Of a stretch of DNA of 64,000 bases, positions 6,800 to 63,812 are shown one piece after another; positions within the stretch are counted from its first letter, which is position 1; the number at the start of each line of letters is the position of its first letter. The notes under the pieces were generated by a model. That model ran no database searches, had not been told where the DNA came from, and saw only the letters and a list, made by a program, of their open reading frames with translations. This DNA is from Octopus sinensis. Lineage: Eukaryota. The stretch is taken from the NCBI RefSeq assembly GCF_006345805.1, contig NC_043003.1:95046001-95110000 (forward strand), given 5' to 3'. The translations under genes and the position numbers were made by a program.

Positions 6800-7032
6800 T
6801 TATTTCTTTATTGCCCTCAAGGGACTGAACATAGAGGGGACAAACAAGGTCAGACAAAAGTATTAAGTCAATTACATCGACCCCAGGGTGTAACTGGTAC
6901 TTATTTCATTGACCCCGAAAGGATGAAAGACAAAGTCGACCTCAGCAGAATTTGAACTCAGAACGTAACAGCAGATGAAATACTGCTAAGCATTTCGCCT
7001 GGTGTGCTAACGTTTCTGCCAGCTCGCCACCT
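6800..7032 (-). mobile_element. SINE family B (B1 tail)
   Basis: Full head, core and tail ttgtcccctctatgttcagtccc...aataaagaaata. Confidence 0.88.
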
Positions 7033-8605: not shown

Positions 8606-9239
8606 CATGTGGTGTCATACAACCCATATTAAGAAAGTAAATTAAATTATACGCAAATGAAATTTAATACAACTTCCAAACAGATGCATGGTTTGCAAAG
8701 CACCATGACTCTTTAAAACAACATGAAACTTCATACAGTCAGTGCAATCATATCTATTTTTCTTAATGCTCACTCAGGGTTTTGTTACTGAGATACACAC
8801 CGAAATTATCTTTGTATTTTGGGGTTTAACATTGTGTATAAACACACCAAAATTGTATTTTGGGCGCTTACATAATATATAAACATTAAAATTATCTTTG
8901 TATTTGAGAGGTTATATTGTATACACACACACACACACAAATGAAAGAAAAAAACTATCTTTGTTTTTTTATGGGATATGTTATTTCACAAGAATGCAGC
9001 ACAGACATGTTTCAGGGGTTGTTTGTTTGTTTTTTTGTATTTTTCTCTCTGGAAATAATTTGCACATTACAACATTTTTACCTACAACAAAGTATTTAAA
9101 GAACTAAAAAAGAACATTGTTTATTAATTTCTCATACATAACATATTTTAGAAGTATGTAGTATTAAGAAAACAAACCAGGTTGAAAAGAACACATGTAT
9201 CAGCATATACATACATCTCACTCTCCCTTACCCTCACCC

Positions 9240-9260
9240 CACATATTTATATGTATATGC

Positions 9261-9299
<39 letters not shown>

Positions 9300-9324
9300 C
9301 ATATTTATATATATGTGTATATGC

Positions 9325-9359
<35 letters not shown>

Positions 9360-9370
9360 ATATATATTAC

Positions 9371-9423
<53 letters not shown>

Positions 9424-9508
9424 CATATTATATATATATATACACACATATATATATACACACATATATATATACACATATATATAATATATATATATAT
9501 ATACACAC

Positions 9509-9552
<44 letters not shown>

Positions 9553-9572
9553 GTATACACACATATATATAT

Positions 9573-9605
<33 letters not shown>

Positions 9606-9620
9606 CACACACACATATAA
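9240..9620. repeat. Compound (TA)n/(CA)n microsatellite
   Basis: Seen directly; it produces the YIYI/CVCV ORFs in the track. Confidence 0.97.
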
Positions 9621-10120
9621 ACCACATACACACATGTTAAATATCTTATTCACAGTGGTGCAGCTACAAGTCCCTTAAGAGAACCTCCAGCTGTTTTCTG
9701 AAGGGATCTGATTTCATGTATATGTATATATACATATATGTGTGTGTGTGTGTTTTGTTTATCAGCATGTGTGTGTTTTTCTGCTTAGATGGAGGACAGG
9801 GTTACAAACATTACACATTTGTTTGTTAGGGAAGTCATGAAGTTATGTAAGCTTGTGTGTATTTATACAGAAAGAATATAGAATTCTTTTTCTTTTATTT
9901 TTGGTTGTTCCTTTGAAATATTAATTTGTGCCTGTAATAGTTTATATATAAATTGTTATGTCCCAAGTCAACAATAACTGTGCTGACCTGTGATTAGAGG
10001 TGCTCCAAGTATGACCACCCCACCTTTTATTGAAACAGTGTATCTTGTTCTAGGTTATCCAATGTGTCTTATAGCTTATTTTTGGAAAGACAATTGATCA
10101 GTGAGATGCAGAGATGTGAT

Positions 10121-19335: not shown

Positions 19336-20727
19336 GGGTAGCACCCAATACGAGTGAGAGAGTACCATACAGCTCACTTAACTAAAATCCCTTTTGGCTA
19401 AGTGGGATTACAGCCAAGAGGGAGGCAATTTCATGCTCTTCTCTTATGATAATTAGCTCAAAAGGAAATCATTTTATTAAGCACATTATTTAATGTAGCA
19501 GCTGCTTATTCAGAAGTTTGAGAGTTTTTGACATCAATTCCTAATTGTTACTACTTCATTTTTTATTAATTAGTGCCCATTAAAATGCTATGAATATCAC
19601 ATCTTCCCAGTTTCATCTAATTCCTCTCCACTTCATACCTTAAGCAATGAAAATGACTCTGCAAAGGGAAAAACAAAGTGCTTTTGTTCTATTTTGTTTC
19701 ATGAGGCATTTCTGAGTTTCTGATTAGCCACTTTCATTACCCCAAAGTCAATAAAATTTTAGTCAATGTCATTATCCCAAGGTCAGTAAAATACCATTCA
19801 AGTACTTTAATTTAATATAATCCATTAAACCCTTTCCAGAATTTGTAGCCTTTACACTAAAGTACTAGTGGAATGGGTTAAAGTTTCAGACAAGATTCCT
19901 TGTGTTTTTTTTTTTTACCAGATTTTAAGTTCTGAGTTCAAATTGTTCCAAGAATAACTTAGCCATTCATCCTTTTGAAGTTGATAAAGTAAAGTACCAA
20001 TCTAGTGTTAGGTTGGTGTAATCAACCAGTTTATTCCTTACAAATTTAAGCCTTGTGCTTACATTATAAATAATTGTTATTATCATTATCATCATTATTG
20101 ATATTATCTGGGCAGTGAATTGGTAGAATTGTTAGAGCACGAAATAAAATGCTTTGCAGTATTTCTTTTAGCTTTTTATATTCTAGTTTCAAAACTCACT
20201 GAGGTCAACTTTGCCTTTCATCTTTTTGGGTTCGATAAAATAGAAGTACCAGTTAGATACTGCTGTTGATGATATTGACTAACCCACCACCCTAAAAACT
20301 TTGCTGGCTTTGTGCTTAAATCACAAACCATTATTATTATGTTGTTGTATTTAGGAATGGTCATGTTGCCAGTTTAGCAACATTATTATTATTATTATTA
20401 TTATTATCATCATCATTATCCAGGCAGTGAGCTGGGAGAATCATTAATATGCTAGGCAAAAGGCTTAGTGGCATTTCGTCCGACTGCACATTGAGTTCAA
20501 ATTCCTCCAAGGTCATCTTTGCATTTCATCCTTTCAGGGTTGATAAATTAAGTACCAATGAAACACTGGGGTCAATGTAATCAACTAATCATCTCCCCAA
20601 AATTTCATGTCTTGTGCCTTTAGTAGAAAGGATTATCATCATCGTCATTAAGGCAGCAAGCTGGCAGAATCATTATTGTGCCAGACAAAATGCTAAGCAG
20701 GATTTCTTCTGACTTTACAGTCTGAGT

Positions 20728-21498
20728 GAAGGTGCATAGCTCAGTGGTTAGAGTGTCGAGCTTACGGTTGTGAGCTCAAATCTCGGACTGGGCTTCGTGT
20801 TGTGTTAAATTAAGTTAAGTTAAGTTAATTTTTTGGCTCAAAAAGCAAAAAGCAAGGCCATGTAGGGGGACATGGAGTCATGTACAGGGTGGTGTTCATG
20901 CAAAGAGTTCAGGCCATTTGTGGTCAAGGGAGACTTTGAACCGAGTGGTCGTCGGCATCTTCACTATCTCGTCCAGCATCTTATTCCACGGAGAAAGCCC
21001 CTGTCCTTCGATTGAGATGAAATCGTCACAGATAGAGCTTTTCGGAGTGACCCCGCAGCCGACGTTCTGGAGCAGGAGTGAAGAACAGCTCTTTTGAGAG
21101 GTTACACTTTCCGCTTATGATGTTGTGAGCAAGAATGAGATCACCACGGCGGCGGCGTTTTTCTAGAGAATAAAGGTCGAGCGTCTTCAGCCTTTCTTCA
21201 CAAGACAAATGCTTGAGACCAAGAACCATGCAGGTAGCCATCTTGTTCTTGAGCAAGACGCTTTATTTCACATTGCTCCAGTTCACTCAGCTGTAGAAAT
21301 GAGTTGCGACGTCACTGGTGCCAAGCTGCATTGGCCTTTGCCTTTCCCTTGGATAACACTAGTGGTGTGGAGAGGGGACGCCGGTATGCATAGGCGACTG
21401 CTGGTCTTCTATAAACAACTTTGCCCAGACTTGTGCCTGGGAGGGTAACTTTCTAGATGCAATCCCAGGGTCAGTGTCATAACCGAAGGGGGTCTCAG
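20728..21498 (+). mobile_element. tRNA-derived SINE family D (V-domain-like) inserted in a B SINE and itself split by a LINE
   Basis: Head ggtgcatagctcagtggttagagtgtcg, core cttgagcaagacgctttatttcac. TSD acagtctgagt at 20717-20727 and 21499-21509. Uninterrupted copy at 55305-55640. Confidence 0.82.
20805..21241 (-). mobile_element. 5'-truncated CR1/L2-type LINE with (TTAAC)n tail
   Basis: GLKHLSCEERLKTLDLYSLEKRRRRGDLILAHNII...RGHSEKL is the typical CR1-group ORF2 C-terminus. CpG-rich, so probably young. Confidence 0.85.
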
Positions 21499-22876: not shown

Positions 22877-24958
22877 GCAAAAGCAGTGAGCTGCAGAATC
22901 GTTAGCATGGCAAGCTAAATGCTTAGGGGTATTTCGTTTGTTGCTACATTCTGAGTTCAACAAATACCACCGAGATCAACTTTGTCTTTCAACCTTTCGA
23001 GGTTGATAAATTAAGTACCAGTAAAACACTGGGGTCAATGTAATCAACTATACCTCTCCCCTAAATTTCAGGCCATGTGCCTATAGTAAAAAGGATCATT
23101 ATTATTATGTTCTGAGTTCAAATTCCGCCGAGGTCAACTTTGCCTTTCATCCTTTCGGGGTCGATAAATAAAGTACCAGTTTCCCACTGGGCTTGATGTA
23201 ATCGACTTAATCCTTTTGTCTGTTCTTGTTTGTCCCCTCTATGTTTAGCCCCTTGTGGACAGTAAAGAAATACATTATTATTATTATTATTAAGGTGGTA
23301 AGCAGGCAGAACTGTTAGTACACCAGACAAAATACTTAACAACATTTTGTTCTTCATGACATTCTGTGTTCAAACTCTGCGAAAGTTGACTTTGCCTTTC
23401 ATTCTTTTGGGGTCAATGAAATCAACTAGCTCCTTTTCCACAAGATTTCAAGCCTTGTGCATGTAGTAGAATGAATTTGGTTGATGGAAACTGAAAGAAG
23501 CCCATCATTTGATGTATATGTGCATGCACACACACATAAACATGTGTGTGTTTGTTTGCATTTGCGCTGTACAAAAGTTGCACTTTCCCTGTCAACAAAT
23601 TGTCCATTCACTTTATACCTTCAAAGACATGTGAAATATGATATCTCTTACTTGAAAAGCAAGCAGGTGTGGATTAATTACAGAAAGAGTATCCAACTTC
23701 AGAACGATGCCTCAGTGAGATATTTGTCTAACACATACTAGCATGGTAAAACAAACAAAAACAGACCAAGTTGTAGGCACACATGCTGGCTGGGTGGGGC
23801 TAATATTTTATATTTGATAATATGCTTTGTTATTTTAATCACTCAATAGTTAGGAAGGCACTTTTAGATGCTTCTTTCTATATCTAAATCCTTACTTTGC
23901 ACTTTGCATGGTATTAAGAAATTCTTAAAGCAAGGCAGTCAGCTGGCAGAATCGTTAGCATGCCAGACAAAATGTTTAGCAGCATTTTGTCCATCTTTAT
24001 TTTTCTGAGTTCAAATTCTTCCAAAGTCAACGTTGCCTTTCATTCTTTCGGGATAGATTAAATAAGTACCAGTTGAGCACTGGGGTCAGTGTAACCATCT
24101 AACCTTCCCCCAAAAAAGATTTCAGGGCTTATTCCTGTTGTAGAAAGGATTATGAGATTGTTAAATATACTTGAGATTAACAACTGAAAATTAAAAAACA
24201 AAAGCTAGAGAGGAAAAGGGAGAAAATTGTTGAAGTCTTTTATAACTATTTCATTAAACACACTTTCTACTATTCTTTGGTGCCTTCAACTACTGGATAT
24301 GGTTAAAAAGAGATGATGAGCAATGGCTAGAAGAATACTGATTGAAGCCTAATAGCCAATTGATCCAGCAAATAGGATATCATCTTAGTGTGCAATAATA
24401 ACTGTTGAGAGGAAGGCCCTGAGTTGGTGCACATTCTCTCCTGATGACCCCTATAAACCTGCTGGTATTTGATATGTGGAACTTTCAACTGATAGCACTT
24501 GTATCAGTAAGTTTGCAAATAAAGTCTACAGAAATAGTATGAATACCTCAGGTGTAATAGAATTTGTTATCATTTTAAAGCCAAGTATTATAATTCAGCT
24601 TATCCTGACCTGCTAAAAATGTTTTTTTACTCCCAGATTCACTATTGACTGTTTATTTGTTCCTTCTCTTTACTCCTACCATACCTCTGCCGTATACTGA
24701 TTAATACTGCTCAATCAGACAACCAAACATAGCTTCAATTAATGATGTTAATATCATTAGCATAATTGTTTTAAATTTGTTGTTAATAAGTTGAAAATCG
24801 AAACTTGATTCAGTGAAAGGTTAAAATGATTAAAATGGTGTTTCAGGGAGTTCATTACTGTCAGAAAATGTCTTCTCAAACTAGTGGTTATGTCACTGTA
24901 ATTAGCTACGTAGATTTTGTAATTAAATTGAATGAGTTTAAATCATTAACAACATCAT

Positions 24959-29886: not shown

Positions 29887-30098
29887 GTACTACATTATTA
29901 CTATCCTATTGTTTTCTATTTTAGGTTTCATGTGTTGTCTTAAATTATCCTTTATTAAGGCATAGTTTGGTGTAGATTTAGCTCAGTGGTTCTCAAACAG
30001 GGTTCACATGGCCCTTGGGTGTTCATGTAAGATTTTGTAATAAATTTATTATACTTTGATTATACACAAACTATTTTAACAATTTTTGTTATACAACT

Positions 30099-30209
30099 CC
30101 TTACGGCCATATCACGTTGAAAGCACTGGTTCTCGTCTGATCACCAAAGTTAAGCAACATCGAGCCAAGTTAGTACTTAGATGGGTGACCGCTTGGGTGC
30201 TGTAAGCAT
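30099..30209 (+). pseudogene. 5S rRNA pseudogene with a 9-nt internal deletion
   Basis: ttacggccatatcacgttgaaagcactggttctcgtctgatcaccaaagttaagcaacatcgagccaagttagtacttagatgggtgaccgcttgggtgctgtaagc matches invertebrate 5S as recalled, but lacks AATACCGGG. No T-run terminator; single copy. Confidence 0.9.
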
Positions 30210-30216
30210 CACACAA

Positions 30217-30605
30217 GGCACAGGAGTGGCTGTGTGGTAAGTAGCTTGCTTACCAACCACATGGTTCTGGGTTCAGTCCCACTGCGTGGCACCTTGGGCA
30301 AGTGTCTTCGACTATAGCCTCGGGACAAATAAAGCCTTGTGAGTGGATTTGGTAGATGGAAACTGAAAGAAGCCCATCATATATATGTGTGTGTGTAAAT
30401 GTTTATGTGCCTGTATTTGTCCCCCCCAACATCACTTGACAACTGATGCTGGTGTGTTTACATCCCCGTAACTTGGTGGTTTGGCAAAAGAGACCAATAG
30501 AATAAGTACTAGGCTTACAAAGAATAAGTCCTGGGGTCGATTTGCTCGACTAAAGGCAGTGCTCTAGCATGGCCACAGTCAAATGACTGAAACAAGTAAA
30601 GGAGT
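30217..30605 (+). mobile_element. SINE family A, full length, directly downstream of the 5S copy
   Basis: Head at 30217, tail gtaaaggagt. Confidence 0.9.
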
Positions 30606-32217
30606 AACTACTAATAATATTTAATTATAAAAATATAATGGGACTTTTTTAAAGCACCAAATGTCTATAGGGGTCTAGTCATGTAAAATAGGAATCAAAA
30701 GGGACCCATAGGCAAAAAATGGTTGAGAACCACTGATTTAGCTCCTGTTTGTAGCAGGTTTAGCAATCATACAGAGACTCCCACTTTGATTGTATAAGAT
30801 AGGTTATTGTATTATTTAGCTGTAGATCATCAATGATAAAGCAGACATATGATCAAAAGTAGTCCAGCTATGACCATTCCATAGTTTATTCAAATAATGT
30901 ATCTTAGGCTATATTATCCACTGAGTCTAATATTCTATAGACAGTACAATGTGATTTGGTGTAATTTAGTTGTTATTTATAGCATGTCAAATAATCGTGT
31001 AGAGTTGGTTCTGTGAGAAATAAGGAAATGGTAGATGTGATATGTATCAGGGAAAACATCATCAAACAGCAGTCATATCTGGTTCATAGTCTTAACTCAC
31101 AAATATCTTTTTATCATTCTAAATTATATTTGCTCAGTGACTATTGTAGGAAGTAATTGAACATTTACTTTTCATCTCTCACTCAAAAATGTTAACCATG
31201 AAGTATTCTGTATTCTTTAATTACCTTCAGAAATAATGAAGAATTTGAGGAGGTTTAGTCAAGTAATTAACACATTATTATTAATTTGGTATTTATAACA
31301 TAATTAAGGGCTTTGTATTAAATTCTAATGTAAAGTTTTAATTTAACCCTTTTTGTTACCATGTTCCTGTTGCGATGCACAGTCATTGTTTCATTTAATT
31401 AATGAGAAAGAATTCATTAAAATAACTTTGTCATTATTAAGATGGTATTTGGAACATAAATTAACATGAAATTTTGATGAAAGGTTTTAATTATACATCA
31501 CTTTAAACAAGGAGTTTGCATCATATAACCTTGGTTAGCCTCAGTGGGGTTGGTATCAAGAGATCTGTTCTTTCATCTTTTATTTGTTTCAACCATTAGA
31601 CTTGGCCATGCTGGGGCACCACCTTGGGAAATTTCTTTTAGTCAAATGAATCAACCCCAGTTCTTTTTTTTTCTTTTAAGCCTGGTACTTATTCTATTTG
31701 TCTCTTTTGCCAAACCACTAAGTCATGGGGTCATAAACACACCAGCACTGGTTGTCAAGTAGTGCCATTGTTTCAATATGTTCATCTGCCAAAATAGTTC
31801 ACATCTAACATTGCATCTCATGATTTCAATGTAAACCTGGCTCAGGTGGTTTGCGTGTTAATTAACCCATAGTTGGTTCCCTGACAAATGCTACTACACC
31901 AGCTCAGAGTAAACTTAAGAAAAATAGTGGCTAAAAGATGGTTCCACCCTCCTCAAAACCCTAGAATTTGGAATTTCCAGGATTTTAAAGAATGTGGGAT
32001 AACCTCTTAGCCAGTATTGTTCCTAGGTCTATGCTGACCCAGAGTGGTAGTAATATCATGGGTATGGCTTTAAAACTGCATCCAGTAGTTGGACCTTGGC
32101 TCAGGTCTTCCACCATACAGAAATGGTAATGTTTACCATTGAGTGGATGTACATACTGTACAAGAATAGCTGTGAAAATATGTTTTAGAGAATTCATGTA
32201 TAGTATAATTGATATAT

Positions 32218-32805
32218 AAGTGCAGGCATAGCTATGTGGTAAGAAGCTTGCTTCCCAACCACATGTGTGGCACCTTGGGCAAGTGTCTTCTACTATATCC
32301 TCTGGCTGACCAAAGCTTTGTGAGTGGATTTGGTAGACAGAAACTAAAAGAAGCCCTGTGTGTATATATTTATATGTGTGTGTGTGTGTGTGTATATCTT
32401 TGTGTCTGTGTTCTCTGCGCATGTGTTGCCACCTCCACCACCACCATCACATGGTTCTGGGTTCAGTCCCACTGCGTGGCACCTTGGGCAAGTGTCTTCT
32501 ACTATAGCCTCAGGCCAACTAAAGCCTTGTGAGTGGATTTGGTAGATGGAAACTGAAAGAAGCCCGTCATATATATGTGTGTGTGTGTATGTTTATGTGC
32601 CTGTGTTTGTCCCCCCAACATCGCTTGACAACTGATGTTGGTGTATTTACATCCTCATAATTTAGCGGTTCAGCAAAAGAGACCATTAGAGGAAGTACTA
32701 GGCTTACAAAGAATAAGTCCTGGAGTTGATTTCTTTGACTAAAAAAAAAAAACCTTTAAGGCAGTGCTACAGCATGGCCACAATCAAATGACTTGAAGTA
32801 AAAGA
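32218..32805 (+). mobile_element. SINE family A: 5' half followed by a second nearly full copy
   Basis: Core is repeated at about 32270 and 32480. Confidence 0.85.
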
Positions 32806-34526: not shown

Positions 34527-35754
34527 ACAAGGTGGATCATGGTATGATATGCCACAAACTGTGTGATCTCAGCATAGCTGGAAAACTTGGGGTGTGATTA
34601 CATGACTTTCTGAAAGATAGAAGTCAGGCAGTAGTGGCTAATGGAGACACCTCTGTAATAAAAACACGAATAGTGAGTGGTGTTCCACAGGGCACTGTCT
34701 TGGGACCACTGCTTTTTATAGTGGTCCTCTCAGATATGCCTGCAAGTGCCCGGAGAGCCACCCTTGCAAGTTATGCAGACAATATGAAAGTCTCACAGAA
34801 AATACAGAACCCCAGCGATGTTGCACATCTGCAGCAGGGGTTGGACTCAGTTTACAGATGGGCTGAGGATAATAATATGCAGTTCAATGCGGAAAAATTC
34901 CAAGCCCTACGCTACCAGCGTCCAAAACTGAATATGAAACTTACAGGGTACACTGGTCTATAGGGAGTTTCAATCCCAGAGCCTAAATCAATGAGGGACC
35001 TGGGTATCGACATGAGTGATGATACCTCTTTCCAAGTGCACATTACCAGGATGGTGACAAAGTGCAGATGACTGGCTGGATGGATCCTAAGAACATTCAG
35101 AACCAGAGATAAAGAAACTATGATTGTCCTCTGGAGGACATTCGTCCTCAGCCACCTGGATTACTGCTCCCAGCTATGGTCACCCAACTGTGTGAAATTA
35201 ACAGTGGACCTTGAAGCAATCCAGAGAAGATTCACAAAAAAGATCGTCTCTTTGCAACTGCTCAGCTACTAGGAAAGGCTGAAACAGCTAAGACTCTACA
35301 CCCTGGAGAGAAGGCGGGAGAGGTATGCAGTAATATACGTCTGGAAGATCCTGGAAGGTATTGTGCCAAATTTTAGCATTGAAAGCTACACCAATGCCAG
35401 AACAGGACAACACTGTATAGTGCCAAAGATCCCAGCAACGTCATCGTGCTTCAGGACCAGTTACTGCAATAGCCTGGGTTTCAGGGGCCCACAGCTTTTT
35501 AATATTCTCCCAAAGAGCCCGAGGAACTTGCACAAAGTAGATTTAGGTGTTTTTAAATCAAAGCTGGACCTCTTCCTATCGAGAGTCCCAGATGAACCTA
35601 CCTCACAGCAAGAGGTACAAATGAGGGTAGCTACATCAAACTCCATTCTTCACCAAGTGCTACATATTGGAGGAGGCTGTCAGTAATAACAGTTTAGCAA
35701 AACGGCGGTGCATCAGCATGGCCACAGCTCTGAGCTGAAACTACAGAAAAAAAA
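34527..35754 (+). mobile_element. 5'-truncated CR1/L2-group LINE, RT C-terminal half with stops, and 3' end
   Basis: SGVPQGTVLGPLLF...SYADN...LQQGLDSVYRWAEDNNMQFN, later LERRRERY and FKSKLDLFL. A-rich tail; candidate TSD aaataca at 34523-34529 and 35752-35758. Confidence 0.9.
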
Positions 35755-35804
35755 TACATTTATATTTATATTTATATGTATTTAGATATTTATGTATTTA
35801 TATT

Positions 35805-35840
<36 letters not shown>

Positions 35841-36039
35841 ATATATATATATTCATATTTATATATTCAATAATATAATAATTCACTCCCTGATAGTAAA
35901 CTGCAGTTGCTGCGCAATTACTTGTAACACACGTGAGTGATTGGGGAAGAATAAGAGTTTTCACTTGTCTGTATAAATTCAGAAGTGCTGGTTTTGAGAT
36001 ATTAGTTATTTAACTTCGCTTGGTCGAATATGTATTTAA

Positions 36040-36410
36040 TTACTAGTAGCCGCAATTCCAGATGATGCCACAGCTAGGGCAATGCCTTGTGTTCGCCTAA
36101 TCTCAGCCAATATTAATTTGTTGACAAAAGTTTTCACAGTGCTCCCAGGAGTGTCCAGGAAAAAAATCCCCCCAGCTTTGGCCCGGACTGAATTAACAAC
36201 GGAGTTGTAAGCAAACTTCTGTTCTGGAAGGAGCTTTGGCTCATTGTCGGCTATGTACTCGGCAAGCTCGTCAACATTAAAACATGTCTCACGCAGCAAA
36301 TATCAAGACAGAGTGTTTGTGCCTTCCCGGTTTGTTGAAGGTAGGCCATAGACCGGCAAGGCACTACCACCCATATCAAGTACAGTATCTTCAAACGTAG
36401 TTTGTTACCA
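36040..36410 (-). mobile_element. Helitron RepHel fragment (PIF1-type helicase N-terminal motifs)
   Basis: GGIFFLDTPGSTVKTF (decayed Walker A, normally DAPGGTGKTF) and IALAVASSGIAAT, preceded by MGGSALPVYGLP. Confidence 0.85.
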
Positions 36411-37469: not shown

Positions 37470-37594
37470 ATTTGTGTATATTTATATATATTTATATATG
37501 TGTATATTTATATATTTTTATATATCTATGTATATATAATATATATATATATATATACATATATATTTATATATATATACTTATATATATATAC

Positions 37595-37625
<31 letters not shown>

Positions 37626-37627
37626 CT

Positions 37628-37720
<93 letters not shown>

Positions 37721-37750
37721 CATATATATTTATATGTATATATATATAAG
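37470..37750. repeat. Imperfect (TA)n microsatellite
   Basis: Seen directly. Confidence 0.95.
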
Positions 37751-37914
37751 CTAATGAAACATTACATTATGTAGGCTGGATCTTACCCTGCATCTTACTT
37801 ACATTAAGGTGTTTAACAATGGATTGCAACTGTACTGCTTGTCTGATGTCTTAATGGTTCAACTAGCACCGAACTCACAGTATTTAGTTTTGACTCTTTA
37901 TCTTCTAAGTTTAA

Positions 37915-49830: not shown

Positions 49831-50911
49831 TACACACATACATACATACCATCTTCATCATTTTAACATGCACTTTTTGATGCTTGCATGGGTTAGATAG
49901 AATTCATTGGTGTAGATTTTCTATGGTCAGATACACTTCATGTCACCAACTTCTACCTGTTTCCAAACAAGGTAATATTTCCCCATGGCTAGACATACTC
50001 ACAAAACACTAGAAACAAGGGTCAATGCTCATATGACAGTAATGCTCATTTGTAACTATAGTGCAGTGTCAAGGATAAGGCAGCAAAAACACCCATGCAC
50101 ACATTCACACAAACATACCTATATATCTATACACAGATATATGATGAACTTGAATTTTCTGTGTTCCAAATCTACTTGGGGGCTAAGGCTTTAGTAGGAC
50201 AGGGCCAACAGTAGAAGACACTTGCCCAAGGTTCCATATAGTGAATCTGAACAAGAAACCATATAACTGAGAAGCAAACATATTAACCACACAACTATGC
50301 CTGCATCCATATATTTACATACATCTAAATGTGTATGTGTGTATATATATATATATAGGCATGTGCCGTCAGTAATTACTTGGGGTAGGCAGTTGGTAAC
50401 CTTTATGTAGTAAACACATAGAAAATAAGCGAAACACAGGCGTGCAACTGAATTGAAGGCAGATTTACTTCTGCCTTTATAGCACATAAAGAAAACAGTG
50501 TTGTAGGAGTGTATGCAGCACATGTACTACAGCAGTACTATGCGTAGCTTAAATACTGAAATTGAAAAGCAGAGACGAATTATGCCTACCTAATCTACAA
50601 AAAAATAAAATATTTTGCATTTTATGCATAGTAATCAGAGTAACCTTTATAATTTTATTGAATTAGGTGCATATTTTGCCATAAAAGGAAAATGTTGCTT
50701 TCAATCTATTTTATTCAAGTAGGCACTGCCTACCTTGCCTACCTAGGCGGCATGACCCTGATATATATATGTATGTATATGTATGTGTATTTATATATAT
50801 ATATGTATGTATGTATATATATATATGTATGTATATATATATATGTATATATGCATGTATATATATGTATGTATATATATATATGTGTATGTGTGTGTGT
50901 GTCTATATATA

Positions 50912-51544
50912 CACGAAGGAAGTCAAAAATTATCCGCACTTTCGCCATAACATCTTTATTATTGTCTCACTGCCTTCTGTGCGTGCGTGCTTATAATTGG
51001 TAGTATTGTGGTCACATGATGAAAGTTTGAGCCTGATCACTCCATTTTTCTTGCTGGCTTTACAATATAAGCATGGCTGCCCCACTAACAATGTTCACCA
51101 AAGAAGAACAAAGAGCAATGATCCAAGAGATGGTAATAGTGAACCGGTTCACCAATACCATCTCTTGAGCTTGCTGAATTTTCTCCTCAGTGTTGGAGGT
51201 TGACGGGGCGTCCTTCTCCCTCTTTGTGTGTCACACTTGTCCAGCTACTTTTAAAGTTCTCAATCCACTAATGCACACTTCTACTCAGCAGTGCATTGTC
51301 CCCGTATTGTGATAAAAGCCACTGATGAATTTCAGTACTTAACACACCTTCCAATCAGAGAAATCAGATGACTACTCTTTGTTCTTCTTTGCTGCACATT
51401 GCTAGTGGAGCGATCAGGCTCAAATTTTGATTACGTGACCACAATAGTACCAACTATAAACACTCATGTGTAGAAGGCAGTGTGACAATAATAAAGGTAT
51501 GTTATGGTGAGAGTGCAGATAAATTTTGACTTCCCCCTCCTGTG
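50912..51544. mobile_element. Mariner-derived fold-back element with long inverted arms
   Basis: TA-flanked, arms of about 135 bp or more. Minus strand 51170-51390 translates MCSKEEQRVVI*FL*LEGV..EIHQWL..QYGDN (mariner HTH). Confidence 0.8.
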
Positions 51545-52859: not shown

Positions 52860-53030
52860 GAATCCTTTAGACAACACTATGAATTAGCTCCTACTTCTCA
52901 AACTTTGTCCATCGTGAAACATGTTCCAGCTACTTTCACTCTGCTCAAGAAGGTTGTAAGTTATTTAATACACCTGAAGAGGGAGTTACACAAAATGATT
53001 CATAGAGTATCCTGGAGATTATATTATATC
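52860..53030 (-). mobile_element. Possible Tc1/mariner transposase C-terminal relic
   Basis: tctccaggatactctatgaatcattttgtg resembles a decayed SPDxNPMDYFVW motif. Confidence 0.3.
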
Positions 53031-53039
53031 ATTGTACCA

Positions 53040-53121
53040 AATGTATATATATATGTATATATATATATATATGTGTATATATATATATATGTGTATATAT
53101 ATATATATGTGTATATATATG

Positions 53122-53154
<33 letters not shown>

Positions 53155-53165
53155 GTATATATATG

Positions 53166-53197
<32 letters not shown>

Positions 53198-53215
53198 TAT
53201 ATGTATAATGTGTGT
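53040..53215. repeat. (TA)n/TATG microsatellite
   Basis: Seen directly. Confidence 0.95.
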
Positions 53216-53532
53216 ATAATACATTAATTTTGTGCTTTATAGATCAAATGCTGAGACCTTAAATAACAGCCAATAAAGAACTTTATTTCCAATTGTAATT
53301 TCCAATATCAGCTACTGTAATTGATTATTTGTTATCTCTAAAAGTTCTCATATTTCAATTGAAAAATAAAAATCAATAAATAGCACATAATAGGTGTTAC
53401 GTTTGGCATAAATCTTTTCAGTCACTTCTTCAAGCTAGGAATTTCATTTTCAGTGCAAGATTTCTCCTCAAAAGGTTAGATATTTCTCTTCATTACTATC
53501 TGGCATTACAGAAAAATCCCCACCCGACTTAA

Positions 53533-54499: not shown

Positions 54500-54900
54500 T
54501 CATTAGGATTACAAAAATGGATCCTCTTTTCATCTCCAGTTACAATTCAACACCAAAAACAGGCATCTTGAGGATTTATAAATGTTCACATGTTGCTGAT
54601 CCTGGTCATTGGTTAGTTTGTGCAGAACTCCTCAACACCATTTGTTCAAAAGGTTGAGCTTATGAAGGTGTTGACTGATGGAACTTTGTGAAGGACCAAG
54701 TTCTGCTGACAATGTTTGAGTGCTTGTGCTTGGTAGTTGTTCAACCATTTCAAGCAAAACCTCATTTTCCACAGCCAAAGGTCCTCTTGCTTTGTCTTTA
54801 AGGCTGGTGCCACATTCTTTGATATGTCTGAACCCGTTTTGGCTACATATTCATTAATATTTACTGGGCCTTCCACTCAATCCTTTTTTCCACATGTTGC
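54500..54900 (-). mobile_element. Mariner transposase pseudogene fragment
   Basis: LLEMVEQLPSTSTQTLSAELG...HLHKL...VLHKLTNDQ (WVPHxL-like), then IVTGDEKRIHF (first catalytic D). Confidence 0.82.
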
Positions 54901-55966: not shown

Positions 55967-57180
55967 TATGGTGAGCTAGCAAAGTTGTGAAAATGTCAGA
56001 TAGTTTGTTTTGTTGTATTCTTTGTGACATTTTGTACTCAGATCAGTGTTGACAGTACCAGTCTTGTACTGGGATCTGTTCTTCTGTTTCACTCAATCTT
56101 ACTATCTGTGTGTTACACAGTAGTTTGAAATGGGCTTCACTATCATATAAGCGTAGTTATCCATTTTCAATCAAAAGCTTATCTGGTGATGGAGAAAAAT
56201 TTTTTTCACTTAGAAATAGGAAGGGCAACTGGCTGAGAAAATTTACTGTTACAAACTCCATTTGAACCATGCCATCTGAAGACATTAGAATGATGATGTC
56301 TAAGGAGAAAGTGAAATGAAAATTTAAGGCATTGACTAACTTTGTCAGGAATTGTGCCAATGGAAGTAAAACTTTTCTGGCTGGAAATTGAAGCAATTTG
56401 CAGTTGCGAACTTATTACAAGAATGGGTTTGCTTCAAAAAATGCAAGCTGCAGTGGTGGTGGCAGCAGCAGCAGTAGTAGTAGTAGTTGTAGTAGTAGTG
56501 GTGGTGGTACAATTTGATCTTCTTGCCCTATACTATAATTAATTCAGATGTTGGCAAATTCATAACTAAATATTACACAGTAAACTTAATACCCATGCTA
56601 AAAGATGACAAAACCTTTGATGATTGATAATGTTGCCAATAAAAGACTCTGGAATCCTGCTTGTTTGCTGGTTTCAAATTGACTCTTTTACCAAGCTATT
56701 GAATTACCTTTTCAACAAATTTTCTGAAAGCTGAATCCTTCTTATTTAGAAGTAGCTAAAAACACTTCCATTGGACATTGGAGAAAAGTTACTTTATGCC
56801 GAAATAAGTATTGTAAATCTATTATCGTCTTTTTGTTTTGTTCTTTAATAAAAGAAAGGGGTGTTTTTCGTTTTTGCTTCATTTTTTACATACATTCAGT
56901 CATTGGTTTGTTTTTATGTTCATTTTCCCATGTCAGCATAGGTTAGATCAGTATTTCTCAACCATTTTTTACCTAGGGACCGTTTTGATTCCTATTTTAC
57001 TTGGATGGATCTTCCTAGCCATTTGATGTTTTAAGAAAATCATATTGTATTTTTATAATTAAATATCAAATTAAAATATTTTATGTATTGTAGAAATATA
57101 AGCAATTTATTGCAGATAAATTTTAACAGCAAAATCTTATATGGATCCCAACTAAGAACCAATTAAATGAACATATTATT

Positions 57181-62929: not shown

Positions 62930-63812
62930 TGAGGTCTGATCAATAAGTATCCAGACTGTTGCTAAAGTAACACTAACAAAGTAACATAGTAATGAAGCTA
63001 AAGCATACAGAGTGAAACCGCTTGGCACAGCTTGACTTTGAACCCTGTTGTGCATGCACTCTAAGTTTTAATATTCTAGCTCACTTCTGCTGTTTACAGC
63101 AGTGCTTAGAAGGAAGGTGTGTAGTGTCTGATCGCATTGACCCTAAAAGAGTAAGTTGAGCAGAGAATCTGCATCAAATTTTGCCAAAAGCTTGGCAATA
63201 CCTGTCCAGAGGCCTATGCAAAGTTTTCAAAATATTTTCATCGTTCTCAACACAATCAACGAGATCTTGTACAACTGAAACCCGAGTGTCTTTATGATCA
63301 GCTGAAAGCAGTTTTGGCACAAACTTGGCAGACATGTGTCTCATACTCAAATCTTCATTGATAATGGACTGAACTGAACCATAACTAATCTGTACATCAT
63401 CTGATAACTCACAGTTAGTGATTCGACAATTTCCCCCCACACAGCTGCATGCACATCTGCGATGTTTTTCTCAATTCTGCTGGTTGTCAGTCTCCCAGAA
63501 CATTCATCAATATTGACACTTTTTAGTCCATCTTGGAAATGTCTGAACTACTCATACACTTTCCACAACTTTGCACAGGCCTCTGAGCAGGTATTGCCAT
63601 GACAACTTTCTCTGTCATGGTCAATGTGATGATCACATGCTACATACCTTCCTCCCAAGCACTGCTGTAAACAACAGAAGTGAACTACAATATTAAAACT
63701 TAGTGCACATGCACAGCAGAGTTTAAGGTCAATCTTTGCTAAGCGGCTTCACTCTGCATGCTTTAGCTTCATTACTATGGCAACAGTCCGGATACTTATT
63801 GATCAGACCTCA
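62930..63812. mobile_element. Mariner fold-back element (883 bp) made of two head-to-head 5' ends
   Basis: TA|TGAGGTCTGATCAATAAGTATCC...GGATACTTATTGATCAGACCTCA|TA. Plus strand gives VEQRICIKFCQKLG; minus strand gives LSMRHMSAKFVPKLLS (WVP-like motif). Confidence 0.9.

What the first reader, a model, noticed from the sequence alone, without database searches (positions are those of the whole stretch)
30095..30612. 5S rRNA-SINE chimera apparently inserted as one unit into a hAT MITE
Seen: an almost complete 5S copy (box A and box C largely intact, AATACCGGG deleted between GGG microhomologies, no oligo-T terminator) is joined through a 7-nt linker (cacacaa) to a full tRNA-SINE A in the same orientation. 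The whole unit is flanked by aactcct (30095-30101) and aactact (30606-30612) and sits in a MITE with a perfect 8-bp TSD. Known: LINE RT template switching makes small-RNA/retroposon chimeras (for example U6-L1), and 5S-headed SINE3 families exist. Inference: either a one-off template-switch chimera or a member of an unrecognised composite 5S+tRNA SINE with two Pol III promoter types.
Basis: partly seen in the sequence, partly recalled or inferred. Interest (0 to 1): 0.7.

Follow-up and report, generated by a model that had tools for sequence, protein, structure and literature searches.

The report
5S rRNA copy fused to SINE
A decayed copy of 5S ribosomal RNA sits head-to-tail against a full-length octopus SINE inside a small DNA transposon; it most likely arose when the SINE's partner LINE reverse transcriptase jumped from the SINE RNA onto a 5S RNA, a known kind of event, so it is a tidy example and not a new kind of element.

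Summary
The sequence features are real. Rfam finds a 5S rRNA copy at 30099-30208 (74.7 bits), about 10 nt short near its 3' end and with no T-run. Eight bases (tcacacaa) follow, then a full-length copy of an abundant octopus SINE (30217-30607), same strand. All of this lies inside a ~240-bp MITE with 16-nt terminal inverted repeats and a perfect 8-bp duplication (ATTTAGCT).

The claimed 7-nt duplication around the unit is not good evidence. Its left copy includes the first 5S bases and its right copy overlaps the SINE tail. Only AACT remains, and a repeat that good arises by chance in 15-29% of trials.

Co-insertion is still the best reading:
- Both RNAs have precise ends and the same orientation.
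- Neither part has flank repeats of its own.
- 5S RNA lacks the 3' tail that the SINE shares with its partner LINE (34540-35789).
- A chance SINE 5' end within 10 nt has odds of about 0.1%.

I could not decide between a one-off chimera and a composite family, because no searchable DNA collection held octopus sequence. None of 21 other SINE 5' ends in 125 kb carries 5S.

Both readings have precedents (5S/L1 chimeras; 5S+tRNA Deu-SINEs). Interest is modest.

The parts
29976..29983 (.). Left copy of the MITE target-site duplication, ATTTAGCT
   Evidence: Perfect direct repeat with 30736-30743 (family D12).
29984..30098 (.). Left arm of the hAT-like MITE. The terminal inverted repeat is 29984-29999 (CAGTGGTTCTCAAACA). 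The last 4 nt (30095-30098, AACT) are the candidate left duplication of the inserted unit.
   Evidence: Inverted repeat I2. Bases 30082-30092 pair with 30624-30634 (I23), so MITE sequence reaches at least 30092. AACT is the only flank repeat found and is not significant.
30099..30208 (+). 5S rRNA retro-copy (pseudogene), about 110 nt. The box A, intermediate-element and box C region is present but decayed at CpGs. About 9-10 nt are missing after box C. There is no terminator T-run.
   Evidence: Rfam RF00001, 74.7 bits, E 6e-14, full model span. It is the only 5S-like sequence in the window.
30209..30216 (+). Junction filler tcacacaa. The first t may be the last U of the 5S RNA and the last a may be the first base of the SINE, so the true filler is 6-8 nt.
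   Evidence: Read directly. It is not part of the SINE consensus or of the 5S model.
30217..30607 (+). Full-length SINE.
- tRNA-like head: about 30217-30290, with an A-box-like motif at 30227-37 and a B-box-like motif at 30270-80.
- CORE-like segment: begins at CCTTGGGCAAGT, 30292-30303.
- Internal TA/TG microsatellite: about 30380-30400.
- LINE-derived 3' end: 30552-30607, with tail GTAAAGGA + GTAA.
   Evidence: BLAST to about 20 copies in the window and more in O. vulgaris loci. Alignments. The copy is 5.5% diverged from the 9-copy consensus, and 10 of its 19 mismatches are CpG decay. The tail is shared with the LINE.
30608..30735 (.). Right arm of the MITE. The terminal inverted repeat is 30720-30735. 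A T6 run at 30645-30650 is the first Pol III terminator-like run downstream of the 5S start.
   Evidence: I2; alignment to the second MITE copy from about 30615 on; no run of four or more T between 30099 and 30644.
30736..30743 (.). Right copy of the MITE target-site duplication, ATTTAGCT
34540..35789 (+). 5'-truncated copy of the SINE's partner LINE: the C-terminal half of the reverse transcriptase with 3 in-frame stops, plus the 3' UTR. It supplies the enzyme family inferred to have made the chimera.
   Evidence: Pfam RVT_1, E 8e-12. Its last ~55 nt align with the SINE 3' end. A 71%-identical LINE with an open ORF (L004) ends ...GGCGGTGCCCCAGCATGGCCACAG...CTGAAACAGAGTAAAAGAGTA, matching the SINE end and tail unit.
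56944..57170 (-). Second, diverged copy of the same MITE family (about 80% identity), without 5S or SINE. It serves as an approximate empty site.
   Evidence: It lacks about 30 nt around the insertion point, so it cannot fix the exact boundaries.
32448..32793 (+). 5'-truncated SINE copy of the same subfamily as the focal copy. The two share the diagnostic TGTTTATGTGCCTGT.
   Evidence: The motif occurs exactly only in these two copies within 125 kb.

Best explanation
This is a LINE-mediated chimeric retrocopy made in one integration event.

Proposed steps:
1. The reverse transcriptase of the SINE's partner LINE (a family with the same 3' end and GTAAAAGA tail) started target-primed reverse transcription on a SINE RNA at a nick in the MITE.
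2. It copied the SINE to its 5' end.
3. It added or picked up 6-8 extra bases.
4. It jumped onto the 3' end of a mature 5S rRNA and copied it to its 5' end.
5. The resulting 5S-filler-SINE cDNA was joined into the MITE.

The copy has since decayed, mostly at CpGs, and lost about 9 nt of the 5S either during reverse transcription or later. On this reading the locus is an inactive by-product, one of possibly many independent 5S-SINE chimeras.

Shown: the anatomy, the shared LINE/SINE tail, the absence of separate flank repeats, and the absence of both parts from the other MITE copy.
Inferred: the template switch itself, the order of events, and the lack of activity.
For: - The 5S has complete RNA-type ends, with no upstream gene flank beyond 6 unaccounted bases and no T-run.
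- The SINE is complete to the consensus 5' end.
- Both lie on the same strand, 8 nt apart.
- There is no exact flank repeat of 4 nt or more, and no 6-of-7 match, around the SINE alone or the 5S alone.
- The 5S is followed by neither poly(A) nor the LINE-type tail, whereas the SINE carries the tail of a LINE present 4 kb away.
- The window holds 12 SINE 5' ends, so the chance of one lying within 10 nt downstream on the same strand is about 0.1% (my estimate).
- The other MITE copy lacks both parts.
- Only 1 of 22 SINE 5' ends in 125 kb of octopus DNA is preceded by 5S, as expected for a rare side product.
- CpG decay is of similar degree in both parts: 10 events over 15 consensus CpGs in the SINE, and about 5 of 10 in the 5S against a consensus recalled from memory.
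- Precedent: LINE-1 forms chimeras with 5S rRNA (10.5% of 253 human chimeras), and each is a unique event that does not propagate (bioRxiv 10.1101/2025.02.02.635956).
Against: - The unit-level duplication (AACT) is no better than chance, so one-event integration is not directly demonstrated.
- A 6-8 nt filler is longer than I recall for described chimera junctions (not checked here).
- Human 5S/L1 chimeras are mostly antisense and truncated, unlike this sense, near-complete 5S.
- Uniqueness was not tested, because no octopus genome could be searched by DNA.
- Finding such a locus in a single 64-kb window suggests that 5S-derived loci are common in this genome, and a family would also explain that.
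Confidence: 0.45

Rival explanations
1. The locus is a copy of an amplifying composite SINE family. A founder chimera of the same origin kept a working 5S internal promoter ahead of the tRNA-type promoter. It was transcribed by Pol III as one RNA and was copied repeatedly by the partner LINE through the shared 3' tail.
For: - There is no run of four or more T from the 5S start to 30644, so one Pol III transcript could span the unit.
- The box A, intermediate-element and box C region is retained, and the deletion lies just 3' of box C (plus recalled consensus).
- The LINE-recognised tail is present.
- One such locus in a single 64-kb window suggests a high genomic count.
- The giant squid genome is reported to hold about 24,000 5S-derived loci, 'likely SINEs' (PMC6962438).
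- SINE pairs that share body and tail but differ in having a tRNA or a 5S head are known: CoeSINE4/5 and HaSE1/HaSE3 (PMC5786205).
- 5S+tRNA composite heads are known in Deu-SINEs (PMC4824008, PMC4758252).
Against: - None of the 21 other SINE 5' ends in 125 kb has any 5S remnant or the filler.
- There is no second 5S-like sequence in the window, in 61 kb of O. vulgaris or in 21 kb of Argonauta.
- No junction-spanning ORF is present among 5.8 billion predicted proteins, although this is a weak test.
- The SINE part differs from ordinary copies only by one subfamily motif, shared with a truncated neighbour.
Confidence: 0.3
2. Two independent events: a 5S pseudogene was inserted in the MITE first, and a SINE later landed by chance 8 nt downstream of it (or in the reverse order).
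For: - SINEs are very dense here (12 5' ends in 64 kb), and nested insertions are common in the window.
- There is a weak 5-of-7 similarity between TATACAA upstream of the 5S and CACACAA after it.
- The unit-level duplication is not significant.
Against: - No flank repeat exists for the SINE alone.
- The 5S has no poly(A) or LINE tail that would explain retroposition on its own.
- Chance adjacency within 10 nt on the same strand is about 0.1%.
- Both elements have complete ends exactly at the junction.
Confidence: 0.1
3. Read-through or 5' transduction: at a source locus a 5S gene or pseudogene that had lost its terminator lay just upstream of a SINE. A transcript from the 5S promoter ran through the SINE and was retroposed once.
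For: It would give the same architecture, and the filler would then be source-locus DNA. The missing T-run fits.
Against: It requires an earlier chance adjacency of the same kind, so it only moves the problem back. The 5S 3' end looks like that of a mature RNA (...GCA+T) and not like a mutated T4-5 terminator.
Confidence: 0.05

Closest known systems
Chimeric retrocopies made by LINE template switching (U6/L1, 5S/L1 and similar; Buzdin et al. 2003, and the catalogue in bioRxiv 10.1101/2025.02.02.635956)
   Same: A small Pol III RNA copy is fused 5' of a retroelement's 3' part in one insertion. The small RNA lacks its own tail. The small RNA and the retroelement share one integration.
   Different: - The 3' partner here is a full-length SINE and not a 5'-truncated L1.
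- The enzyme is a tail-specific LINE with a GTAAAAGA repeat tail (CR1/L2-like by my reading), not L1.
- There is no clear flanking duplication.
- Human 5S/L1 chimeras are mostly antisense and truncated, whereas this 5S is sense and nearly complete.
5S+tRNA composite SINE heads of the Deu-SINE group (AmnSINE1 and relatives; Nishihara et al. 2006, as described in PMC4824008 and PMC4758252)
   Same: [quoted passage not shown]
   Different: [quoted passage not shown] They are proven multi-copy families with a Deu domain.
- Here the tRNA-like head is complete, the body is CORE-like, and only one copy is known.
SINE3, the 5S-headed SINEs (Kapitonov & Jurka 2003), including pairs that share body and tail with a tRNA-headed sister: HaSE1/HaSE3 and CoeSINE4/CoeSINE5 (PMC5786205)
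   Same: A 5S-derived 5' module sits ahead of a LINE-derived tail, and the head was exchanged on an existing SINE body.
   Different: In those families the 5S replaces the tRNA head. Here it is added in front of it. Family status is unproven here.
Octopus CORE-SINEs (OR1/OR2 of Ohshima & Okada 1994, as cited in PMC4824008 and PMC4758252)
   Same: The SINE moiety has a tRNA-like head followed by ...ACCTTGGGCAAGT..., which contains the CCTTGGG motif quoted for CORE and Ceph domains (PMC5786205).
   Different: I could not obtain the OR1/OR2 sequences, so identity with either was not tested.

Membership tests
LINE template-switch chimeric retrocopy | A small-RNA copy lies 5' of, and in the same orientation as, the 3' part of a LINE-mobilised element | tested here: met
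   5S at 30099-30208 (+) and SINE at 30217-30607 (+).
LINE template-switch chimeric retrocopy | The small-RNA part has RNA-type termini: it starts at +1, ends at the mature 3' end, and has no terminator or gene flank | tested here: met
   Rfam model 1-120 is covered. Only 6 nt separate the MITE arm (to 30092) from the 5S start. No T-run follows the 3' end.
LINE template-switch chimeric retrocopy | One target-site duplication brackets the whole chimera, with none at the internal junction | tested here: inconclusive
   There are no internal repeats. The outer repeat is only AACT, with a chance frequency of 15-29%. Other copies of this SINE also show short duplications (such as 6-nt AGGCCT) or none.
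LINE template-switch chimeric retrocopy | An empty site lacks both parts | tested here: inconclusive
   The second MITE copy lacks both parts but also lacks about 30 nt at the site and is only 80% identical. No orthologous locus could be reached.
LINE template-switch chimeric retrocopy | The junction is unique in the genome | not testable with these tools
   No octopus DNA is present in metagenome, prokaryote-genome or viral collections.
Composite 5S-headed SINE family (SINE3 / AmnSINE1-like) | 5S-derived head retaining box A, the intermediate element and box C | tested here: met
   The Rfam alignment covers that region. Box positions are judged against the Xenopus/metazoan consensus recalled from memory. 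Present-day motifs carry CpG-decay changes.
Composite 5S-headed SINE family (SINE3 / AmnSINE1-like) | 3' tail shared with a partner LINE | tested here: met
   The SINE end matches the LINE 3' ends at window 35715-35765 and L004 1720-1772, including the GTAAAAGA unit.
Composite 5S-headed SINE family (SINE3 / AmnSINE1-like) | Many dispersed copies with the same head-body junction and different flanks | tested here: inconclusive
   0 of 21 other SINE 5' ends in 125 kb and no junction ORFs in protein databases. This sample can only exclude a family that makes up more than a few percent of the SINE copies.
Composite 5S-headed SINE family (SINE3 / AmnSINE1-like) | AmnSINE1 type specifically: a partial tRNA remnant and a Deu domain | tested here: not met
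   The tRNA-like head is complete (consensus positions 3-76). The body carries the CORE-like CCTTGGGCAAGT motif. No Deu-domain comparison was possible.
CORE-SINE (the SINE moiety) | tRNA-derived head with A and B boxes | tested here: inconclusive
   ARAGORN finds a cloverleaf only at a 70% threshold on the consensus. Rfam gives no tRNA hit. The boxes match 10 of 11 positions by eye.
CORE-SINE (the SINE moiety) | Central CORE domain | tested here: inconclusive
   ACCTTGGGCAAGT at 30291-30303 contains the CCTTGGG motif quoted in PMC5786205. The wider match to MIR is from memory only.
hAT-type MITE (host element) | 8-bp target-site duplication, short terminal inverted repeats, no coding capacity, more than one copy | tested here: met
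   ATTTAGCT occurs twice, the inverted repeats are 16 nt, the element is about 240 bp without the insert, and a second copy lies at 56944-57170. The repeat start CAGTG fits the hAT YARNG rule as I recall it. No transposase was examined.

The most novel reading that the evidence does not exclude
The locus is one member of a so far undescribed, multi-copy octopus SINE family. In it a near-complete 5S rRNA module (type 1 Pol III promoter) sits in front of an intact tRNA-type CORE-SINE (type 2 promoter). That would be the 'intermediate stage' of head replacement that was inferred, but not seen, for AmnSINE1-type elements. It might also be related to the roughly 24,000 5S-derived loci reported in the giant squid.
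Probability: 0.3. Interest if true: 0.5.

Novelty: new member of a known kind. Interest (0 to 1): 0.3.

Why it matters
If it is a one-off, it is a clean invertebrate example of template switching by a tail-specific LINE, which I take to be CR1/L2-like and not L1. The switch would run from the very 5' end of a SINE RNA onto 5S rRNA. This is the step that has been proposed to create new SINE heads, so it is useful as an illustration but not surprising.

If it is a family, it would show a SINE carrying two complete Pol III promoter types in tandem. It would allow a test of which promoter drives transcription during head replacement, and it could help explain the very high counts of 5S-derived loci reported in cephalopod genomes.

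Either way the locus has no evident effect on a host gene.

Tried and rejected
1. DNA search for the junction. The pattern (5S 3' end, 0-20 nt, SINE head) in JGI metagenome contigs gave no hits. The SINE head alone also gave none. A conserved SINE core gave none in prokaryote genomes or viral contigs. The collections hold no octopus DNA, so these negatives say nothing.

2. 'ORF trick'. Peptides translated across the junction were searched against 5.8 billion predicted proteins.
- The sense frame gave nothing.
- The antisense 88-aa query gave only four SINE-only hits, three of them O. vulgaris 'hypothetical predicted proteins'.
- The three O. vulgaris loci (61 kb) held many SINE copies but no 5S and no MITE copy.

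3. Placing the window or reaching an orthologue. Exact look-up of four long window ORFs found none on record.

4. Harvesting more octopus DNA. The LINE reverse-transcriptase query returned mostly distant hits at about 45% identity. The only close ones were a 2-kb ENA scaffold and Argonauta hians. These helped with the LINE tail but not with copy number.

5. The CR1-like LINE end at 20.8-21.3 kb was rejected as the partner, because its tail is (TTAAC)n.

6. Literature.
- No paper in the library describes a 5S-headed SINE in octopus.
- The Octopus 5S rRNA paper (Walker & Doolittle 1983) and the O. bimaculoides genome paper are not held.
- The 5S comparison therefore rests on the Rfam consensus and on memory.

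7. Assembly artefact was rejected. The unit sits between matching arms of one MITE with an intact 8-bp duplication.
Full report
**What is in the sequence**

Rfam finds exactly one family above threshold in the 64-kb window. It is a 5S rRNA at 30099-30208 on the + strand, scoring 74.7 bits with E 6e-14, and the whole model (1-120) is covered by 110 nt. Helix I and the 5' two-thirds align with high posterior probability. The shortfall of about 10 nt lies in the 3' third. Against the metazoan 5S consensus as I recall it (a lead, not a test), it corresponds to loss of AAUACCGGG between two GGG runs, immediately after box C.

The copy ends ...GCTGTAAGCA and is followed by T CACACAA and then GGCACAGGAGTGG. 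There is no oligo-T.

From 30217 to 30607 runs a full-length copy of a very abundant SINE.
- About 20 related segments occur in the window, and the best five are 82-87% identical over about 390 nt.
- More copies occur in three O. vulgaris loci fetched later.
- Alignment of nine near-complete copies gives a consensus starting (T)AGGCGCAGGAGTGGCTGTGTGG and ending ...ACTGAAACAAGTAAAAGA. The end is followed by one or more further GTAAAAGA units.
- The focal copy reaches the consensus 5' end, and its tail is GTAAAGGA plus a partial GTAA.

The whole unit lies inside a small element with these features:
- Terminal inverted repeats at 29984-29999 and 30720-30735.
- A perfect 8-bp duplication, ATTTAGCT.
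- A length of about 240 bp without the insert.
- A second, 80%-identical copy at 56944-57170 (-) that carries neither 5S nor SINE.

**What needed correcting**

The proposed 7-nt duplication (aactcct at 30095-30101, aactact at 30606-30612) is not sound evidence.
- Bases 30099-30101 belong to the 5S as Rfam aligns it.
- Bases 30604-30607 (GTAA) are the start of a second tail unit of the SINE.
- What remains is AACT. An exact repeat of 4 nt or more within the same offsets turns up in 15% of random position pairs and 29% of shuffled flanks.
- Other copies of this SINE show only short duplications (for example 6-nt AGGCCT at L001:14220) or none that I could see. A clear duplication is therefore not expected for this family in any case.

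The second MITE copy lacks about 30 nt around the site, so it cannot fix the boundaries. Partial arm-to-arm complementarity places MITE sequence up to 30092 on the left and from about 30615-30624 on the right.

The tRNA origin of the SINE head is plausible but weakly supported by direct tests.
- Rfam gives no tRNA hit, and ARAGORN finds nothing at default settings.
- ARAGORN finds a cloverleaf at consensus positions 3-76 only at a 70% threshold.
- The body contains ACCTTGGGCAAGT. This includes the CCTTGGG motif quoted for CORE and Ceph domains (PMC5786205). The element is probably one of the octopus CORE-SINEs of Ohshima and Okada (1994), but I could not obtain those sequences.

**The enzyme**

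A 5'-truncated LINE lies 4 kb downstream, at 34540-35789 (+). It has a reverse-transcriptase domain (Pfam RVT_1, E 8e-12) and only three in-frame stops in 391 codons.

Its last ~55 nt (GGCGGTGCATCAGCATGGCCACAGCTCTGAGCTGAAACTACAG...) align with the SINE 3' end (GGCGGTGCTCCAGCATGGCCACAGTCAAATGACTGAAACAAG...).

A 71%-identical LINE with an open 443-aa ORF sits on an ENA metagenome scaffold (L004). It ends ...GGCGGTGCCCCAGCATGGCCACAGCCTGCGGGCTGAAACAGAGTAAAAGAGTA, which reproduces the SINE end and its tail unit.

This is the SINE's partner LINE family. From the C-terminal ...LERRRERY... motif and the 8-nt repeat tail I take it to be CR1/L2-like. That assignment is inference, since database names say only 'jockey'-like.

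**How the unit most likely arose**

Five points favour a single origin for the 5S and the SINE.
1. Both have complete RNA-type ends that meet at an 8-nt junction on the same strand.
2. Neither part has a flank repeat of its own. There is no exact match of 4 nt or more, and no 6-of-7 match, for the SINE alone or the 5S alone.
3. The 5S carries neither poly(A) nor the LINE-type tail, so it has no evident way to be retroposed alone by a tail-specific LINE. The SINE supplies that tail.
4. With 12 SINE 5' ends in the window, the chance that one lies within 10 nt downstream on the same strand is about 0.1% (my estimate).
5. The other MITE copy lacks both parts.

The simplest mechanism is the one proposed for chimeric retrocopies and for new SINE heads. 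Target-primed reverse transcription starts on the SINE tail and runs to the 5' end of the SINE RNA. A few extra bases are added, and the enzyme then jumps to the 3' end of 5S rRNA (PMC4824008; PMC4758252; bioRxiv 10.1101/2025.02.02.635956). These steps are inferred and were not shown here.

The degree of decay is compatible with one age. The SINE part is 5.5% from the consensus, and 10 of its 19 mismatches are CpG transitions. The 5S part shows about half of its expected CpGs decayed, but this rests on a remembered consensus.

**One-off or family?**

No DNA collection available here contains octopus sequence. The control searches for the SINE itself were empty in metagenome, prokaryote and viral contigs, so the empty junction search means nothing.

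Searching peptides translated across the junction against 5.8 billion predicted proteins found only SINE-only ORFs from the O. vulgaris annotation.

In the 125 kb of octopus DNA I could assemble (the window plus L001-L003), 22 SINE copies keep their 5' end and only the focal one is preceded by 5S. No other 5S-like sequence is present. That excludes a composite form making up more than a few percent of this SINE, but it does not exclude a family of thousands of copies.

For a family:
- The unit has no internal run of four or more T. The first is the T6 run at 30645-30650.
- It keeps both promoter regions and the LINE tail.
- The giant squid genome is reported to contain about 24,000 5S-derived loci, 'likely SINEs' (PMC6962438).

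For a one-off:
- The negative sample above.
- In the best-studied system, each chimera is a unique, non-propagating event.
- This SINE is so abundant that even rare template switching would scatter many independent 5S-SINE chimeras through the genome. That would equally explain meeting one in a single window.

I put a one-off or recurrent chimera at 0.45, a family copy at 0.30, independent insertions at 0.10 and read-through from a source locus at 0.05. The remainder is unassigned.

**Comparison with what is known**

Both readings fall within described kinds.
- 5S/LINE-1 chimeras are catalogued in primates, although they are mostly antisense and truncated.
- 5S sequence fused 5' of a tRNA-derived SINE head is the accepted structure of AmnSINE1-type Deu-SINEs.
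- SINE pairs with the same body and tail but a tRNA or a 5S head are known: CoeSINE4/5 and HaSE1/HaSE3.

What is slightly unusual here is that the tRNA-type head is still complete behind a near-complete 5S, and that the enzyme is a tail-specific non-L1 LINE in a mollusc.

I rate it a new member of a known kind, with interest 0.3. If it proves to be a family, it would be a living intermediate of head replacement and would be worth about 0.5.

**Limits**

- The source species was not identified. SINE identities to O. vulgaris copies (83-87%) equal those within the window, which fits the genus Octopus.
- The hAT assignment of the MITE rests on the 8-bp duplication and the CAGTG terminus only.

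Noticed in passing
window 34540-35789 (+); L004 560-1805: A 5'-truncated LINE copy has only 3 stops in 391 codons, and its 3' end and GTAAAAGA tail match the SINE, so it is the SINE's partner family. A 71%-identical copy with an open 443-aa ORF sits on an ENA environmental metagenome scaffold (ERZ23491053), which suggests cephalopod-like DNA in that sample.
   Followed up: partly
window ~20820-21260 (-): The 3' end of a different CR1-like LINE (C-terminal ...LYSLEKRRRRGDLI... ORF) ends in a (TTAAC)n tail. It is not the partner of the focal SINE.
   Followed up: partly
L002 18201-18328 (-) (O. vulgaris OX597836.1): A U4 snRNA-like sequence (Rfam 69.8 bits) directly abuts the (AAT)n tail of another abundant octopus SINE. 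It is a second case of a small-RNA pseudogene touching a SINE, but in the opposite relative orientation.
   Followed up: partly
window 32448-32793 (+): A 5'-truncated SINE copy lies 1.8 kb downstream on the same strand. It is the only other copy in 125 kb sharing the focal copy's diagnostic TGTTTATGTGCCTGT. Because it is truncated, it cannot show whether that subfamily carries a 5S head.
   Followed up: partly
window 20492-20650, 22938-23108, 6864-6973 and many others: A second high-copy SINE-like family (...GGCACAAGGCCTGAAATTTTGGGG...GGTACTTAATTTATCGACCC...) has an (ATT)n/(AAT)n tail and is as dense as the focal family.
   Followed up: no
window 36036-36299 (-): An ORF fragment matches the PIF1-like helicase family (Pfam PF05970, E 6e-14). 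It is probably a Helitron remnant.
   Followed up: no
window 63174-63440 (-) and 54646-54876 (-): These ORF fragments look like mariner/Tc1-type transposase N-terminal HTH regions, by eye. The one fragment scanned against Pfam (63174-63440) gave no hit at E 0.01; 54646-54876 was not scanned.
   Followed up: no
L001 10001-10378, L002 10001-10387, L003 10001-10366: The O. vulgaris GCA_951406725.2 annotation contains 'hypothetical predicted proteins' (P0001, P0002, P0004) that are simply antisense translations of this SINE.
   Followed up: yes
window 9180-9680, 37470-37775, 50690-51000, 52900-53220: Long TA/TG/CA microsatellite tracts give spurious ORFs of 100-140 aa rich in I, Y, C and H. No convincing host-gene exon was seen among the window's ORFs of 75 aa or more (by eye).
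   Followed up: no
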